Source of the DNA: Heteronotia binoei
Lineage: Eukaryota
Direction of reading: 5' to 3'
Assembly (NCBI RefSeq): GCF_032191835.1
Contig: NC_083237.1
Span: forward strand, 12,772,001-12,836,000
Length of the DNA: 64,000 nucleotides
Positions within the stretch are counted from its first letter, which is position 1, and each line of letters starts with the position of its first letter. Positions 9,511 to 37,588 of this stretch are shown piece after piece. The position numbers and the translations under genes were made by a program. The notes beneath the pieces were generated by a model. The model saw nothing but the letters and a program-made list of their open reading frames with translations. It did not search any database and was not told the origin of the DNA.

Positions 9511-10389
9511 GTGAATAATAGACTCCATGAGTAGCTATCTTGATCGGTGGCAGAAGCCGGATTCAGGAACAGAAGCACCTTGGGACAAGCAAAATGGTGG
9601 GGCACTAGCTTTCAAAACTCTTGCTCATATGTTGAGAATTTCGACATTCAAAAGTTCATACCGGGAAAATCTGTGACTAATGGTCTTGGAAGGGAGCGCT
9701 GTAACTTGAATCCAACAGTAGTTCAAAGCCACTCGCCTCTTTACACAAAATGCTCGTAAGATCAGCTGGTGAGAATCGGCTTCCCGTTTCTTTTTCTAAA
9801 TGTAACGCTTTGCCTGAGTTCTGAGTGCCCTGAAAGCTTTCACAATTATTTATGTCGCTGGCCCTAATAAAAAAAGAATTACATGCCCGCCCGCCCGCCC
9901 CCCCCCCCCCAAACCCTCGTGTGCTCATTTACTGGTAAATTCTATTGGAAAACTACAGGGGACATTTTTTAACAGACCACAGGCATGAAGTGCGGAATAA
10001 TATCCCGTACACAGTAAACCAAAAGAGCCCACCCCTAAGCACCAGTAAGCCTCTGTCGACTGCAATGCCCCCCCCCTCCCTTTTGGCTATGGGTTCCCAG
10101 AGTGGAGTACTCAAGCAGGCATCCGTTCTCAGGTTCATAAAGCAGAGACAAGCTGGCTCACATCAGATTTATTTGCAAGGAGACAACTCTTAACAGCAAC
10201 TTCAGCTAACATGCAAATACCGGAAACTTTAAACTAGCGCTCCACCTAAAAGTCTTTATCAAGTCAAACATTTATTACAGGATGAGCATACCGTTCCAAA
10301 TTCACATATACAATAAATACACCACATCGATGCCTGTAACCAGCATTAAACTTTGCTGTTCTTCAAGTTGCCACTGGATTCAGACCCAA

Positions 10390-25220: not shown

Positions 25221-27917
25221 ATGATTCCAAGGTACGGGAGGGGAAGACTGGCTCAGCTGGCGGCGTCCACCGGAAGGGCTGCGGCTGTCTGTCTGCAAGA
25301 ACCACATTTCTCAAGTGGGGACGAAACCGGCGCCCCTCAGGCCCCTGCCATGGGGCCTCCCCGGAGGTCTGTACAGCCAGTGCTGAAGGAGGAAGAAACC
25401 TGCCAGTCAACAGCGCAGAATCTGTTTTCCTACCTGAAAGAGGAGGAAGAAGAGGAAGAGGAGGAGGAAGAAACCACCGAGCTAGGAGCTTTTTTGACAG
25501 CACCTACACCTTCCACTCGGCTGGCTTTGAAACAGTCCTGCCACTCGGAGTCTCGTGAGGTGCTCTGCTACTTAAAGAAGGAGCAAGACGAGGCGACAGC
25601 CGCAGGGATAATGCCGTCGTCCCCACCCCATCACCTTCCACCCTTAGGCACTCCTCCAGAATTCCCTTCCTACTCATCACCTGCAGCCACAGGGAGAAAG
25701 TTCCACCGCCACGCTGGAAAAGAGATGCTGCATGTCTTCCCGCCGTTGACCCACGTCTCGGCATCCTCGTACCACTACAAACGTGGACGCGAGCACGAGG
25801 GACCGACGGCCGGAGTGGACTTTGCGCCCTCTCCTGCACCCAAGAAGACGACGTCGGCCGTGTGGGATTACTTCACTCTGGACCCGAGAGAGCCCTGCGT
25901 GGCGATCTGTAGCACTTGCCAGAAACGGGTGCGGAGGGGCAAAGACGGAGGTACCCGGCCCGGCACCACAGCCCTCCACAAACACTTGAGGGTCCACCAC
26001 GGGCTCCATTTGCCAGGAGTTGCGGTGGTCCCGCCTTCAACTCTGCTGCCCCCCAAAGAGAGACCTCAACGGAATCCTGTGGCAGTCGCTGAACCCGCTG
26101 CAGCCTTCCAGCTTGCCCATCAGGAGAGGAGCCAGCACTATTACCCTCCCACCCACCCGATGGCCATCCAGTTGGCCTCGGACACTGCTTGGATGTTAGC
26201 CGTGGACATGCAGCCCCCCTCCTACGTGGAAAGCGAAGGGTTCCTCCGGCTGATGGCTACCGCCCAACCCCTTTGGAAGGTTCCCGGCCGAGCGTTCTTT
26301 GCCACCAAGGCCATGCCGGAATTGTCCAACGCGTTGTCCAGAATGGTGCGTCAAGCCGTAGCATGCAGCGTAGGCCGCACCATCCATATTGCCCTAGACA
26401 CGTGGTCCGGCTGCCAAGCGGTGTGCTACATATCTGTGACAGCGCACTGGGTTGCTGAGTCGGAAGGCACGCTCTCCCGGCAGCATGCCACCCTCTCCGT
26501 GTGCGCCTTCGAGGGGACCCGCTCGGAAGAGGACATTTGCCAGAAACTGCGGGAAGTCTTGCAGGATTGGCTGTGCGACTTGAAGACCGGGGGCGTGATC
26601 ACAGACGACGGCACCGACTTGACCGAGGCCACGAGGCGACTGAGCCTCAAGCACGTCCCTTGTCTAACGAGCAGCCTGAAGAGGGTCACGAAGGCCTTTT
26701 TGGCGACCGACCCCCAAGTCGCCCGGCTCCTGAAAAAGTCCCGGAGGATCTGCAGCCGCTACGCGTCCTCGGCAGCCGCCCAGCACCGCCTCCTAGAAGC
26801 ACGAGCCGATCTGGGTGTACGTCGGGCGAGGTGCTCCGAGGCCCCAGCGAGATCCAGCTCGACCTTAAGAATGCTGGAATGCCTGCTCAGGCAACAGCGA
26901 GCCCTTAGTGCCATGTGGGACCAAGACGAGGAAGCTCCCTCCTTACGTCTGACGCTGGTGGACTGGGAGCTGTTGAAGTGCTTGGTTGACATCCTCAAAC
27001 CGTTCGAAGATGCTGCCTTGCTGGTGACCCGGGCTGAGGCTACTCTCTGCCAGGCCCTCCCTCTTCTGTGGTTCCTGGAGGAACAACTCCGGGCCCTGAG
27101 AACCCGCTACTATCAAGAGAACAGCAACTCTGGAGCACACTTGACCACCCAGGCCTTGAACTGTCTGGTAGGGGACGGCCAGCTCCAGGAGATGAAGAGC
27201 GGAACAGTCTGCCGCGTGGCTGCCTTCCTCGATCCCCGCTTCCGGGACATCACCACCATGAAGCTGGGCGGTGCCGGCACAGCCGACGTGGCCCTGTTAA
27301 GAGAGCATATCACTGACTTGGCGACGAGGTCTTACGTGCCACCCGGGCCGGACGGCGAGTTCTCTCAGGCGGGCCGGTTGTCTCCTCAGCGGCCCAGCCC
27401 TTCCAGCAACTCCCCTGGTTCGGCAGCGTGGCAGATCACCATGAAGCGATGGAGGGTCATTACCAAAAGCGACCCCGCGATGGGGCTGGTGAGCGAAGGG
27501 GGCGCCGCCGTGGCCCTTCGGGAAGTGGAGGAGTACCTCCACGACAATGTGGACCACGTTGGGGAAAACGCCGACCCGATGCTTTACTGGCAAGAAAAAA
27601 TGGGGACCTGGCCGGCGCTTTTCAAGGTTGCCGTGTTCCATTTTGGATGCCCGCCGACTTGCGTGTTCTCCGAGGACCCCTCCGAGATGGCCAGCTCTGT
27701 GCCGGCTGCCAGCTACCGCAAGAACCTGACCCCTGCCAACGTGAAGATGTTTACGTTCATCAAGAGGAACCGTCATCTCCTCCCACCAGACTGGAGGCTC
27801 TCTACCGAAGACCTCTCCTCGTCACAGAGCACCATGGGGTCCAGCGGGGACATGGACATGGTAGAGGAAGATCTTCTGACCATGGATGATGAGGGGCAGG
27901 AAGAGAAGGTGGAGTGA
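25221..27917 (+). CDS. ZBED-like protein (BED zinc finger plus hAT transposase core and dimerisation domain), 898 aa from the likely ATG; open frame extends back to 25128
   Basis: BED finger TSAVWDYF...CSTCQK...LHKHLRVHH (about 25845-26000); IALDTWS, VITDDG, AAFLDPRF, DPMLYW, TFIKRN hAT motifs; no stop in 2.7 kb; acceptor tttatctcctctgcag at 25208 then gccATGa. Confidence 0.92.
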   Translation: MIPRYGRGRLAQLAASTGRAAAVCLQEPHFSSGDETGAPQAPAMGPPRRSVQPVLKEEETCQSTAQNLFSYLKEEEEEEEEEEETTELGAFLTAPTPSTRLALKQSCHSESREVLCYLKKEQDEATAAGIMPSSPPHHLPPLGTPPEFPSYSSPAATGRKFHRHAGKEMLHVFPPLTHVSASSYHYKRGREHEGPTAGVDFAPSPAPKKTTSAVWDYFTLDPREPCVAICSTCQKRVRRGKDGGTRPGTTALHKHLRVHHGLHLPGVAVVPPSTLLPPKERPQRNPVAVAEPAAAFQLAHQERSQHYYPPTHPMAIQLASDTAWMLAVDMQPPSYVESEGFLRLMATAQPLWKVPGRAFFATKAMPELSNALSRMVRQAVACSVGRTIHIALDTWSGCQAVCYISVTAHWVAESEGTLSRQHATLSVCAFEGTRSEEDICQKLREVLQDWLCDLKTGGVITDDGTDLTEATRRLSLKHVPCLTSSLKRVTKAFLATDPQVARLLKKSRRICSRYASSAAAQHRLLEARADLGVRRARCSEAPARSSSTLRMLECLLRQQRALSAMWDQDEEAPSLRLTLVDWELLKCLVDILKPFEDAALLVTRAEATLCQALPLLWFLEEQLRALRTRYYQENSNSGAHLTTQALNCLVGDGQLQEMKSGTVCRVAAFLDPRFRDITTMKLGGAGTADVALLREHITDLATRSYVPPGPDGEFSQAGRLSPQRPSPSSNSPGSAAWQITMKRWRVITKSDPAMGLVSEGGAAVALREVEEYLHDNVDHVGENADPMLYWQEKMGTWPALFKVAVFHFGCPPTCVFSEDPSEMASSVPAASYRKNLTPANVKMFTFIKRNRHLLPPDWRLSTEDLSSSQSTMGSSGDMDMVEEDLLTMDDEGQEEKVE

Positions 27918-28007: not shown

Positions 28008-28651
28008 CAGGGGTGTGGAACTCATTTCTTATGAGGGCCGGATCTGACATAAATGAGGCCTTGTCAGGCTGGGTTGTGTCGAGGCCTTGTCGGGCCGGGT
28101 TGTGTCGAGCCGAGCCGTGTGCGTACCTATGTATGATTAGGTAGCAGAGATATAAACTTTATAAAGGACGCAGATTAACATAATTAAAGAGTTTTTAAAA
28201 AACCCTTAACATAAAACATGTTTAAAACATTAGCACTTGTTGGTCCTAAAGGTGCTTTCTTTGTATCTCTCCCACGGGATCCAGGGAAGTGGGCAAAGGA
28301 AGCTCTGGCTCTTTCCTTCCTTCCACAGGGGGCCAGGAGGGAGGAGGAGCCTCAGCCAACAGAAGGCGGAGAGTCTTGGCTCAGTAGCTTTGCAGTGCGA
28401 TTGAGAGAGCCTGGCAAAGCAGGCTCTCCCTCCCCTCTCCTCCCAAAGGGAGGAGCCTCAGCCAATGGAGAAAATAGAGGCTTTGCTCTGTAGCTCCTGT
28501 GCAATTGAGCAAGCCTGGCAAAGCAAGCTGTGATGCAAAAGGAAGCAAGAGAAAGGGAGAAAGAAGCAGATGACAGCCAATTGCTTGGGGGGCTGATAGG
28601 AGCCCTCTGGGGGCCAGATTCAGCCCCCTAACTGCATGTTAGACAGCCGTG
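28008..28651. mobile_element. MITE family D (right arm, inverted; in the putative ZBED 3' UTR)
   Basis: caggggtgtggaac ... gttagacagccgtg; flanks do not form a TSD. Confidence 0.8.
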
Positions 28652-28963
28652 CTCTATCACCAACTCCATCCTTGTACTTCTGGTGAAGCCACTTACAAAG
28701 TCTTTCCACACGACTTTCCCCTTCCTCACAACTAGATGACCCTGGAGGTCCCTTCCAACTCGATGATTCTGTGCTACCTATAGAAAACTCCAGGCTACTG
28801 GATTGCTGGCTATAGCTTGGACCCTTCTGCTGCAAGAAGGTGTACCGTCTAATAACAGGTACTAAACATATTAGATAGGAAGTTAGGGGTTTTTTTGTTT
28901 TGTTTCTCTGTGGCTAAGCTGTGGAGACTGAACTGCATCGTGAAATCCTTTTTTGAATTGTTC

Positions 28964-32121: not shown

Positions 32122-32275
32122 TCTTAAACAACTATTTAACATAGGGCAATTATTTCGACAAATGAAAGAGGATCAGATTACGACCAGCATATCTATTCTA
32201 CTGAAGCCACTATATTTGTCACACTGTAAATGCAGAAATACAAAGTACTCAGCTTTTTCTAGTGAAAAGGTGGGT

Positions 32276-32291
32276 GGTCCTGAAAAGGACC
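32276..32291 (-). promoter_or_regulatory. Histone 3' stem-loop (H4 copy 2)
   Basis: Reverse complement GGTCCTTTTCAGGACC ACCCA; HDE-like GAAAAAGCTG. Confidence 0.95.
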
Positions 32292-32331
32292 TTTGGTGTT
32301 GTTGGAAAATGGCAGGATTCGGAAGCGCCTC

Positions 32332-32811
<480 letters not shown>

Positions 32812-36396: not shown

Positions 36397-37588
<1,192 letters not shown>

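What the first reader, a model, noticed from the sequence alone, without database searches (positions are those of the whole stretch)
25221..27917. Domesticated hAT transposase (ZBED-like) gene embedded in a histone/tRNA cluster
Seen: an uninterrupted 898-codon ORF among otherwise decayed transposons, with a ZBED4/6-like BED finger and a complete hAT fold. Two acidic catalytic positions look retained (DTW 26397, TDD 26604). The CxxH histidine is lost (CLTS, 26661-26672), the RW motif reads ARSSST (26847-26864), and the ERxFS motif reads SEDPS (27669-27683). No enclosing TIR/TSD pair was found. Established: ZBED genes are repeated hAT domestications that act as DNA-binding regulators; ZBED1/hDREF regulates histone H1, and mammalian ZBED9/SCAND3 lies in the chr6 histone/tRNA region. 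Inference: a catalytically dead, possibly lineage-specific transcription factor, conceivably acting on neighbouring S-phase genes.
Basis: partly seen in the sequence, partly recalled or inferred. Interest (0 to 1): 0.75.

Follow-up and report, generated by a model that had tools for sequence, protein, structure and literature searches.

The report
Squamate-wide domesticated hAT gene beside histones
This is a former "jumping gene" enzyme that lizards and snakes have kept for roughly 200 million years as one fixed, selectively preserved gene next to a histone H2B gene, with an invariant DNA-binding finger and a disabled cutting site; it is a clean but fairly ordinary new case of transposase domestication.

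Summary
An 898-codon ORF (ATG 25221, stop 27915-27917) encodes one BED finger plus a complete hAT transposase fold (family profile vs Hermes E 7e-44; Foldseek top 12 hits all Hermes). All motif coordinates check.

It is not a transposon. Full-length orthologues (62-77% identity) occur in every squamate lineage sampled, one locus was returned for each orthologue looked up, and all sit in the same slot: H2B(-) upstream in 7 of 7 loci, H4(-) downstream in 5 of 7. ML dN/dS is 0.167 (BED finger 0.014). The 700-bp inverted repeats flanking the ORF are copies of an interspersed repeat, not TIRs.

It is not ZBED4 or ZBED6. Outside squamates the best relatives are 34% identical, and AU tests reject grouping with ZBED6 (p 0.0003) or ZBED4 (p 2e-7).

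This copy keeps the D, D, E triad. The hairpin Trp (Hermes W319) is replaced in all 17 squamates, and each acidic residue is lost in some orthologue.

New here: a conserved non-coding exon 1 about 1.26 kb from the orphan H2B, a 4.76-kb intron, and a spliced skink transcript contig confirming the junction.

A role on the neighbouring histone genes is untested. The scan earlier noted a different domesticated hAT in this genome (s1-341864).

The parts
18732..19188 (-). Orphan replication-dependent H2B gene (CDS 18811-19188) with its 3' stem-loop (18732-18776); no H2A partner. It faces the ZBED gene.
   Evidence: Pfam Histone E 1.6e-25; tblastn 99% to Eublepharis H2B; Rfam Histone3 41.1 bits; no H2A relic between it and exon 1. 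The same H2B(-) lies upstream of the orthologue in 7 of 7 squamate loci.
19189..20452 (.). Divergent CpG-rich interval between the H2B start and the end of ZBED exon 1. The H2B proximal promoter block (19235-19369) is conserved; a CCAAT box lies about 190 bp before the exon 1 donor. The ZBED transcription start probably lies about 20300-20430 (inferred).
   Evidence: CpG observed/expected 0.7-1.0 here against about 0.4 inside the intron; blastn blocks conserved with Eublepharis, Podarcis and Anolis.
20433..20459 (+). 3' end of non-coding exon 1 (ends at 20452) and its splice donor (GT at 20453-20454).
   Evidence: The block TTCCATCTTGG.T.G|GTRAGT is invariant in window, Eublepharis, Podarcis and Anolis (A3). 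It is unique in the window, occurs exactly once in each of L001, L002, L006, L007 and L008, and has 3 mismatches in Liasis. A spliced skink contig, L011, joins this exon to exon 2.
20453..25208 (+). Intron 1 (4756 nt), enlarged by lineage-specific repeats including the left arm of the flanking inverted repeat.
   Evidence: Donor and acceptor conservation. The corresponding intron is about 2 kb in Eublepharis (donor block at L001 7957-7977, ATG at 10001).
25209..27917 (+). Exon 2: 12 nt of 5' UTR, then the whole 898-codon CDS (ATG 25221, stop 27915-27917). The 3' UTR extends further downstream; its end was not determined.
   Evidence: ORF; acceptor CAG|G conserved in 5 species; full-length orthologues; skink mRNA contig with a 3' UTR of at least 1.4 kb.
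25221..25841 (+). N-terminal region (aa 1-207), low complexity and acidic, with two conserved [FL]SY[LF]K motifs each followed by an acidic run.
   Evidence: Invariant S70 Y71 L72 and L115 Y117 K119 in A1; dN/dS 0.154.
25842..26030 (+). Single BED zinc finger and its invariant extension (KKTTSAVWDYF ... HLPGVAVV).
   Evidence: Pfam zf-BED E 1.9e-5; matches the ZBED2 BED structure 2djr; almost every residue invariant in 17 squamates; dN/dS 0.014.
26136..27830 (+). hAT transposase body: RNase H-like core split by an all-helical insertion domain, plus the C-terminal hATC dimerisation region. Hermes-equivalent positions: D180 at 26397, D248 at 26604, C265 at 26661, H268 changed to S (26670), R318 at 26850, W319 changed to S (26853), E572 at 27672, R573 changed to D (27675).
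   Evidence: Profile vs Hermes E 6.8e-44 with a residue-level alignment; column table; coordinates; AF2 model and Foldseek; dN/dS 0.10-0.15.
23412..24102 (.). Left arm of the flanking inverted repeat: one copy of an interspersed repeat, inside intron 1. Not a TIR.
   Evidence: not matched in the Eublepharis H2B-to-ATG interval.
28008..28728 (.). Right arm of the flanking inverted repeat: another copy of the same family, 91 nt after the stop codon and probably within the 3' UTR. Not a TIR.
   Evidence: other copies at 14122-14513, 15804-15991, 48567-48939 and 53021-53481.
32251..32643 (-). Downstream replication-dependent H4 gene (CDS 32335-32643) with its 3' stem-loop (32251-32296). This is the conserved downstream neighbour.
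   Evidence: tblastn 100% to Eublepharis H4; Rfam Histone3; H4(-) downstream in Eublepharis, Podarcis, Anolis, Tiliqua and Rhineura.

Best explanation
This is the gecko orthologue of a squamate-wide, apparently single-locus gene. It arose when a hAT (Ac/Hermes-type) transposon of a lepidosaur-centred lineage became fixed and immobile beside an H2B gene in the replication-dependent histone cluster, at or before the common ancestor of living lizards and snakes. The gene has a short non-coding exon 1 about 1.26 kb from the H2B start, in a shared CpG-rich interval, one intron, and a single coding exon. The protein keeps one extremely conserved BED zinc finger and the whole transposase fold, including the dimerisation region, and all of it is under purifying selection. 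The residues needed for hAT cutting and hairpin formation are not maintained. The most likely mode of action (inferred, not shown) is a sequence-specific, oligomerising DNA-binding regulator like the other ZBED proteins, with the dead transposase body acting as a multimerisation and interaction scaffold. Its targets are unknown.
For: Shown. Intact ORF with the correct start. BED finger and hAT fold. Orthologues at 62-77% identity in Gekkota, Scincoidea, Lacertoidea including Amphisbaenia, Serpentes, Iguania and Anguimorpha. One locus returned for each orthologue looked up, with conserved H2B(-)/ZBED(+)/H4(-) order. dN/dS 0.10-0.19 pairwise; ML omega 0.167 with lnL 1041 units better than omega = 1; BED finger 0.014. 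W319 equivalent replaced in 17 of 17, R573 in 17 of 17, H268 in 14 of 17; D180 lost in Salvator; D248 lost in Tiliqua, Phrynosoma, Pogona and Phrynocephalus; E572 changed to D in four species. Several outgroup relatives keep the complete set. No TIRs: the flanking inverted repeat is a dispersed repeat family. No other copy in the window. Separate clade with 100% support and a 0.69 stem, nested among tuatara, turtle, tick and other squamate hAT-like proteins. AU tests reject union with ZBED6 (p 0.00028) and ZBED4 (p 1.9e-7). Splice donor and acceptor conserved across families, and a spliced skink transcript contig uses exactly those sites.
Against: The acidic triad is intact in this particular copy, so residual nuclease chemistry cannot be excluded from sequence alone. 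The window's lineage evolves faster than its sister: protein-tree branch 0.18 vs 0.078, codon-tree branch 0.67 vs 0.37, and 15 private changes at sites invariant in the 16 other squamates. That could mean some relaxation of constraint. Squamate-specificity rests on annotated proteomes; an unannotated tuatara or turtle orthologue is not excluded. dS values are saturated (0.8-1.9), so omega is approximate.
Confidence: 0.85

Rival explanations
1. A young or still autonomous hAT transposon that happens to have an intact ORF.
For: Intact 898-codon ORF with the D, D, E triad nominally present; long inverted repeats on both sides.
Against: Orthologous position in seven other squamate genomes spanning the crown group. 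Strong purifying selection. The W319 equivalent is lost clade-wide. The flanking repeats are a dispersed family, 79% identical to each other and no closer than to other copies. No second copy in the window. The gene has acquired an upstream non-coding exon and an intron.
Confidence: 0.02
2. A plain orthologue of a known vertebrate ZBED gene (ZBED6, ZBED4 or ZBED1) that has diverged in squamates, as the automatic name 'ZBED6-like' implies.
For: NCBI names the orthologues ZBED6-like, ZBED6 or ZBED4-like; precomputed Pfam hits to ZBED1_RNase-like families.
Against: Mammalian ZBED6 is 29% identical and frog ZBED4 31%. ZBED6 and ZBED4 fall in the other half of the tree. AU tests give p 0.00028 and 1.9e-7. 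Published synteny anchors are ZC3H11A intron 1 (ZBED6), ALG12 (ZBED4) and DHRSX (ZBED1), with lizard orthologues of ZBED1 and ZBED4 listed there (PMC3606216), whereas this gene lies between H2B and H4. It has one BED finger, whereas ZBED6 has two and ZBED4 four (my knowledge of the literature). No named ZBED1 was placed in the tree.
Confidence: 0.03
3. A once-domesticated gene that is now losing its function in this gecko lineage (relaxed constraint, incipient pseudogene).
For: The window's protein-tree branch is 2.3 times that of Eublepharis. It has 15 private substitutions at otherwise invariant sites; the other species have 2-9, except Salvator with 16. Window-Eublepharis omega of 0.19 is at the top of the observed range. 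Unique changes include CxxH read as CLTS.
Against: The ORF is intact over 898 codons, omega is still far below 1, the BED finger is unchanged apart from conservative substitutions, and the splice sites are intact. The codon-tree branch is longer overall (0.67 vs 0.37), which suggests a generally faster lineage rather than relaxed constraint alone.
Confidence: 0.07

Closest known systems
ZBED6 (placental mammals; domesticated hAT in ZC3H11A intron 1)
   Same: Domesticated Ac/Hermes-type hAT transposase. The whole CDS lies in one exon behind a non-coding upstream exon. BED finger plus hATC region retained under purifying selection, with the catalytic motifs degenerate (mammalian ZBED6 has R at the H268 position and C at the R573 position). 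It acts as a sequence-specific transcription factor (PMC2780926).
   Different: A separate clade, 29% identity, a different host locus, and a different taxon. One BED finger here against two in ZBED6 (my knowledge). ZBED6 keeps the W319 equivalent, which the squamate gene has lost.
ZBED4 (bony vertebrates; next to ALG12)
   Same: The same broad hAT group, with a BED finger plus the full transposase body retained as a host gene.
   Different: A separate clade (AU p 1.9e-7). ZBED4 has its own lizard orthologue next to ALG12 (PMC3606216), four BED fingers (my knowledge) and about 1150 aa.
ZBED1 / hDREF
   Same: One BED finger plus a hAT body.
   Different: ZBED1 lies at DHRSX and has a lizard orthologue. 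Nothing outside squamates exceeds about 36% identity to this gene. No named ZBED1 was placed in the tree, so the relationship was excluded only indirectly.
Hermes transposase (Musca domestica hAT; PDB 2bw3, 4d1q, 8edg)
   Same: The same fold end to end: RNase H-like core, all-helical insertion domain and C-terminal region (profile E 6.8e-44; Foldseek E 2e-13). The D, D, E positions align.
   Different: Hermes is an active transposase with CxxH, RW and SERxFS motifs intact. Here H268, W319 and R573 are replaced, there are no TIRs, and the gene sits at a single fixed locus.
Other squamate hAT-derived genes of the same lineage (Sphaerodactylus 'ZBED6-like' P0026 next to SCAN-ZNF genes; Eublepharis LOC129329364; scan note s1-341864)
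   Same: The same lepidosaur-centred hAT clade (98% support). These are also annotated as host genes, and several have degenerate catalytic positions.
   Different: About 30-34% identity and different loci. None has the histone-cluster position or squamate-wide one-to-one orthology shown here.

Membership tests
hAT transposase superfamily (homology / fold) | N-terminal BED zinc finger | tested here: met
   Pfam zf-BED 25 bits, above the cut-off of 20.6; matches the ZBED2 BED structure.
hAT transposase superfamily (homology / fold) | RNase H-like catalytic core interrupted by an all-helical insertion domain, plus a C-terminal hATC region | tested here: met
   Profile vs Hermes in two collinear stretches, E 6.8e-44; AF2 model and Foldseek with Hermes as the top 12 hits. 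The Pfam Dimer_Tnp_hAT hit alone is below its cut-off (17.2 vs 21.4 bits).
Active (autonomous) hAT transposon | Conserved DDE triad with CxxH, RW and SERxFS motifs | tested here: not met
   The triad is present in this copy but each position is lost in some orthologue. The W319 and R573 equivalents are replaced in 17 of 17 squamates and H268 in 14 of 17.
Active (autonomous) hAT transposon | Short terminal inverted repeats with 8-bp target-site duplications enclosing the ORF | tested here: not met
   The only enclosing inverted repeat consists of two copies of a dispersed 700-bp repeat family. No short TIR pair stood out among the 25 longest pairs listed. Target duplications were not searched for exhaustively.
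Active (autonomous) hAT transposon | Multiple dispersed copies; non-orthologous positions between species | tested here: not met
   One copy in the window. One contig was returned per orthologue, always between H2B and H4. Whole-genome copy number in this gecko could not be tested.
Domesticated transposase gene | Orthologous position across species over deep time | tested here: met
   H2B(-) upstream in 7 of 7 loci and H4(-) downstream in 5 of 7, plus the window. The taxa span crown Squamata.
Domesticated transposase gene | Purifying selection on the coding sequence | tested here: met
   NG86 omega 0.10-0.19; ML omega 0.167, against lnL -15373.7 at omega = 1; BED finger 0.014.
Domesticated transposase gene | Host-type gene structure and expression | tested here: inconclusive
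   Conserved non-coding exon 1, donor and acceptor, and a spliced transcript contig from a skink-like species.
ZBED6 orthologue | Membership of the ZBED6 clade and location in ZC3H11A intron 1 | tested here: not met
   Tree; AU p 0.00028; the locus lies between H2B and H4, whereas the ZBED6 anchor is ZC3H11A per PMC3606216.
ZBED4 orthologue | Membership of the ZBED4 clade and a position adjacent to ALG12 | tested here: not met
   Tree; AU p 1.9e-7; synteny anchor per PMC3606216.
ZBED1/DREF orthologue | Membership of the ZBED1 clade and a position at DHRSX | tested here: inconclusive
   No named ZBED1 was in the tree. Indirectly excluded: nothing outside squamates exceeds about 36% identity, and the lizard ZBED1 is reported at DHRSX.
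Sequence-specific transcription factor | Demonstrated DNA binding and target regulation | not testable with these tools
   Inferred only from the invariance of the BED finger and by analogy with ZBED1 and ZBED6.

The most novel reading that the evidence does not exclude
The transposase was captured into the slot normally held by H2A in a divergent H2A-H2B pair. It inherited that side of a histone-type CpG-rich promoter region and now works within the histone locus, either expressed in step with replication-dependent histones or binding the cluster itself as a squamate-specific regulator or architectural factor. The 200-million-year retention of the head-to-head orphan-H2B arrangement, with a 0.9-1.3 kb spacing, would then be functional rather than passive.
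Probability: 0.12. Interest if true: 0.7.

Novelty: new member of a known kind. Interest (0 to 1): 0.42.

Why it matters
hAT-to-ZBED domestication is a well-known, recurrent route to new vertebrate regulators, but the described cases are almost all mammalian or pan-vertebrate. This one is a clade-defining, squamate-wide gene, currently hidden behind the misleading automatic name 'ZBED6-like'. It has clean one-to-one orthology, a datable origin (at or before crown Squamata, not seen in annotated tuatara or turtle proteins) and living transposase-like relatives in the same genomes for comparison. That makes it a good natural experiment on which parts of a transposase stay constrained after immobilisation: the BED finger almost absolutely, the whole fold moderately, the catalytic residues not at all. 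Its fixed position facing an orphan H2B gives a concrete, testable hypothesis about promoter capture in a histone cluster. On its own it is not surprising to a specialist.

Tried and rejected
1. The 929-aa ORF starting at 25128 is rejected. That ATG lies in the intron, upstream of a conserved acceptor.

2. The flanking 700-bp inverted repeat as TIRs is rejected.

3. A search for a decayed H2A between the orphan H2B and exon 1 in five species found nothing below E 0.39.

4. Turtle 'ZBED6-like' (P0025) and Sphaerodactylus P0026 as divergent orthologues are rejected. Neither has histone neighbours and both lie outside the squamate clade.

6. The first tree attempt timed out in MAFFT on the full-length multi-domain proteins. 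It was redone on the regions homologous to the BED-hAT part.

7. An IQ-TREE codon model with tree search and gamma failed and then timed out. It was replaced by a fixed accepted topology with GY+F1X4. In the omega = 1 comparison kappa was also fixed at 2.0, so it is not a strict one-parameter likelihood-ratio test.

8. The second literature search was swamped by 'hat' matching 'hatch' and histone acetyltransferase papers, so it gave nothing useful.

9. Logan contigs L010 and L012 proved genomic or unspliced and say nothing about transcription.

The CDS lies in one exon and exon 1 is non-coding.
Full report
OBSERVATION. The ORF is real. The ORF listing gives 25128..27917 on the + strand, 929 aa from the first in-frame ATG. 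All squamate orthologues begin MMPR.GRG at that position, and a splice acceptor conserved in five species (AG at 25207-25208) lies 12 nt upstream, so the ATG at 25128 is intronic.

Pfam finds one BED finger (E 1.9e-5, above threshold) and a sub-threshold hAT dimerisation hit. The full hAT fold is nonetheless secure. A profile of 34 family members matches Hermes transposase in two collinear stretches at E 6.8e-44. An AlphaFold2 model of residues 196-898 (pLDDT 78, pTM 0.71) has Hermes as its 12 best Foldseek hits (E about 2e-13, target TM 0.57-0.70).

The setting is also as described. The window holds 12 tRNA genes, three H2B, two H4 and one H2A interrupted by an N run, and four histone 3' stem-loops. 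The neighbours are therefore replication-dependent histone genes.

TWO CORRECTIONS TO THE OBSERVATION. First, the printed HMMER alignment to Hermes reproduces the known catalytic positions with a constant offset of 75 (D180, D248, C265/H268, R318/W319, E572; the residue identities come from my knowledge of the Hermes literature). Mapped this way, the window's protein keeps all three acidic residues, not two. What it lacks is H268 (S), W319 (S) and R573 (D).

Second, the ORF is in fact bracketed by a roughly 700-bp inverted repeat, at 23412-24102 and 28008-28728. The arms belong to an interspersed repeat family with at least four further copies in the window. They are 79% identical to each other and 73-87% identical to those other copies. 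The left arm found no match in the Eublepharis H2B-to-ATG interval. They are two independent repeat insertions, not TIRs.

WHAT IT IS. A word-index search returned 23 proteins, all from squamates and almost all full length, at 66-77% identity over residues 230-929; across the whole protein the 16 aligned orthologues are 62-73% identical. The taxa are Eublepharis, Rhineura, Podarcis, Hemicordylus, Tiliqua, Lerista, Liasis, Thamnophis, Erythrolamprus, Crotalus, Naja, Pseudonaja, Phrynosoma, Sceloporus, Anolis (two species), Pogona, Phrynocephalus, Salvator and Varanus. An exhaustive HMMER scan of 1.84 billion representatives shows a sharp break: the squamate cluster at 65-69% identity and 900-1190 bits, then nothing better than about 34-36% and 350 bits.

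The next-best proteins are a tuatara BED protein, turtle 'ZBED6-like', a Sphaerodactylus 'ZBED6-like' paralogue, Ixodes and Dermacentor hAT proteins, and coelacanth and caecilian ZBED6. True mammalian ZBED6 (29%) and frog ZBED4 (31%) lie further away.

Seven orthologue loci were fetched with 10-kb flanks. H2B(-) lies 3.3-6.9 kb upstream in all seven. H4(-) lies 5-8 kb downstream in five: Eublepharis, Podarcis, Anolis sagrei, Tiliqua and Rhineura. Liasis and Crotalus show only the H2B within the flank. The window has the same order as Eublepharis through the next pair: H2B(-) 18811-19188, ZBED(+), H4(-) 32335-32643, H2B(-) 36400-36777, H2A(+) from 37199. By contrast, the turtle gene has no called neighbours within 10 kb, and the Sphaerodactylus paralogue sits beside SCAN zinc-finger genes.

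SELECTION. All eight coding sequences are intact. Nei-Gojobori dN/dS is 0.10-0.19 for every pair among five species. By region it is 0.014 for the BED finger, 0.15 for the RNase H-like core, 0.10 for the insertion domain, 0.11 for the C-terminal region and 0.15 for the acidic N-terminus. A Goldman-Yang codon model on the accepted squamate topology gives omega 0.167 and kappa 3.2, with lnL -14332.6. With omega fixed at 1 and kappa fixed at 2.0, lnL is -15373.7. dS is saturated, so the values are approximate, but the direction is not in doubt.

CATALYTIC STATUS. Across the 17 aligned squamate proteins the positions behave as follows:
- The W319 equivalent is S (A in Salvator) in all 17.
- The R573 equivalent is D, N or E in all 17.
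- The H268 equivalent is R or S in 14 of 17.
- D180 is T in Salvator.
- D248 is G, N, H and H in Tiliqua, Phrynosoma, Pogona and Phrynocephalus.
- E572 is D in four species.

Several outgroup relatives keep the complete D-D-E, CxxH, RW and SER set: P0030, the tuatara B-box fusion P0032, P0034, P0063, P0081, P0087 and P0099. So the squamate pattern is a derived loss, and the acidic residues in this gecko are retained without being under catalytic constraint. From established Hermes biochemistry (my knowledge), W319 is needed for the hairpin step, so its clade-wide loss argues for an ancestral loss of transposition.

PHYLOGENY. An ML tree of 79 proteins (630 columns, LG+G4) puts the nine squamate sequences in one clade (SH-aLRT 100) on a long stem of 0.69. 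This clade lies inside a 28-member clade (98% support) made of turtle, tuatara, tick and other squamate hAT-like proteins. The ZBED6 clade (mammal, coelacanth, caecilian, tortoise, frogs) and ZBED4 lie in the other half of the tree.

Naming the sister lineages shows that they are mostly other lepidosaur genes: Eublepharis LOC129329364, Sceloporus LOC121921799 and 'ZBED4-like', a family of Hemicordylus 'ZBED4-like' genes all recorded on contigs of the same length, and tuatara BED proteins. AU tests reject forcing the squamate clade together with ZBED6 (delta lnL 82.6, p 0.00028) or with ZBED4 (delta lnL 103.1, p 1.9e-7). The published synteny anchors of ZBED1 (DHRSX), ZBED4 (ALG12) and ZBED6 (ZC3H11A intron 1) differ from this locus, and lizard orthologues of ZBED1 and ZBED4 are listed there (PMC3606216). 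The window's sequence is sister to Eublepharis (99% support), which agrees with the scan's note that this genome is a gecko.

GENE STRUCTURE (new here). Comparing the H2B-to-ATG interval across species shows the H2B proximal promoter (19235-19369) and one short block conserved in gecko, lacertid and anole. Aligned, that block ends in an invariant splice donor: TTCCATCTTGG.T.G followed by GTRAGT. It is unique in the window at 20438-20459. It occurs exactly once, between H2B and the CDS, in Eublepharis, Podarcis, Anolis, Tiliqua and Rhineura, and with three mismatches in Liasis. It was not found in Crotalus.

The model is therefore non-coding exon 1 ending at 20452, an intron at 20453-25208, and exon 2 from 25209. 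A Logan contig, L011 (run SRR12656981), encodes a protein 84% identical to that of Tiliqua. It is collinear with the Tiliqua genome from 13 nt before the ATG through the CDS and well into the 3' UTR, and it carries about 1.46 kb of sequence after its own stop codon. Its first 57 nt do not continue into the intron. Instead they match the Tiliqua exon 1 block and abut exon 2 exactly at the predicted donor and acceptor. So the orthologue is transcribed and spliced as modelled in at least one skink-like species.

In the window, the interval from H2B to exon 1 is CpG-rich (observed/expected 0.7-1.0), against about 0.4 inside the intron. It holds no H2A relic in any of five species. The H2B is therefore a conserved orphan that faces the ZBED gene, with 0.9-1.3 kb between its start codon and the exon 1 donor in window, Eublepharis, Podarcis and Anolis.

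MECHANISM. Shown: a fixed, apparently single-locus, selectively maintained gene with an invariant BED finger, a constrained but catalytically unconstrained transposase body, and host-type exon structure. Inferred: it acts as a sequence-specific, probably oligomeric DNA-binding regulator like ZBED1, ZBED4 and ZBED6. Speculative: that its targets include the surrounding histone genes, or that its promoter derives from the H2A side of a bidirectional histone promoter. Only the conserved arrangement speaks for this.

THIS LINEAGE. The window's protein evolves faster than its sister's. The protein-tree branch is 0.18 against 0.078, and the codon-tree branch is 0.67 against 0.37. It has 15 private changes at sites invariant in the other 16 species, where the others have 2-9, except Salvator with 16. 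Because the whole codon-tree branch is longer and the ORF and splice sites are intact, I read this as a fast lineage with at most mild relaxation.

No eukaryotic genome collection was available, so whole-genome copy number in this gecko and absence from the tuatara, turtle and bird genomes, as opposed to their annotated proteomes, are untested. No exon-joined sequence was built or searched. No N run was filled.

VERDICT. This is a real and correctly read finding: a squamate-wide domesticated hAT gene, distinct from ZBED1, ZBED4 and ZBED6, and fixed beside an orphan H2B in the replication-dependent histone cluster. It is a new member of a well-known kind. I found no description of it in the literature searched. 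The scan had earlier noted a different domesticated hAT in this genome, in a ZNF cluster (s1-341864).

Noticed in passing
window 23412-24102 and 28008-28728: Two copies of a roughly 700-bp interspersed repeat lie in opposite orientation, one in intron 1 and one 91 nt after the stop codon. Given the skink UTR length, the second is probably within the 3' UTR. If both are transcribed in the pre-mRNA they could pair around the coding exon (stretches up to 55 nt at 95% complementarity). The family has internal sub-repeats of about 100 bp and other copies at 14122-14513, 15804-15991, 48567-48939 and 53021-53481.
   Followed up: partly
proteins P0027, P0031, P0038 (tree): Multi-copy Ixodes and Dermacentor hAT proteins ('ZBED4', 'hat-25') nest with 99% support inside the otherwise reptile-centred hAT clade. 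This pattern would fit horizontal transposon transfer between ticks and reptile hosts.
   Followed up: no
window 25425-25595 (aa 69-125 of the 898-aa protein): Two conserved short motifs, [FL]SY[LF]K each followed by a run of Glu/Asp, are invariant at S70-Y71-L72 and L115/Y117/K119 across 17 squamates in an otherwise variable N-terminus. Their role is unknown; they may be an interaction or transactivation motif.
   Followed up: no
protein P0032 (Sphenodon, 1351 aa): A tuatara protein named 'B box-type domain-containing' carries a hAT body of this lineage with the complete D-D-E, CxxH, RW and SER set. It is either a host-transposase fusion model or an annotation that merges a transposon with a neighbouring gene.
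   Followed up: no
proteins P0035, P0046, P0050, P0051, P0098 (Hemicordylus capensis): At least five distinct 'ZBED4-like' proteins of this hAT lineage are all recorded on contigs of the same 459-Mb length, presumably one chromosome. This suggests a local expansion or a cluster of recent copies in that lizard.
   Followed up: no
window 18811-19188, and L001-L003, L006-L009: The H2B upstream of the ZBED gene has no called H2A partner in the flanks examined, and no H2A relic was found in the five species tested, whereas the next H2B (36400-36777) has the usual divergent H2A (from 37199, cut by the N run at 37339-37555).
   Followed up: yes
L003 5880-6314 (Liasis): The python's H2B upstream of the ZBED gene is called as 144 aa instead of 126. 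This is either an N-terminally extended call or a variant H2B.
   Followed up: no
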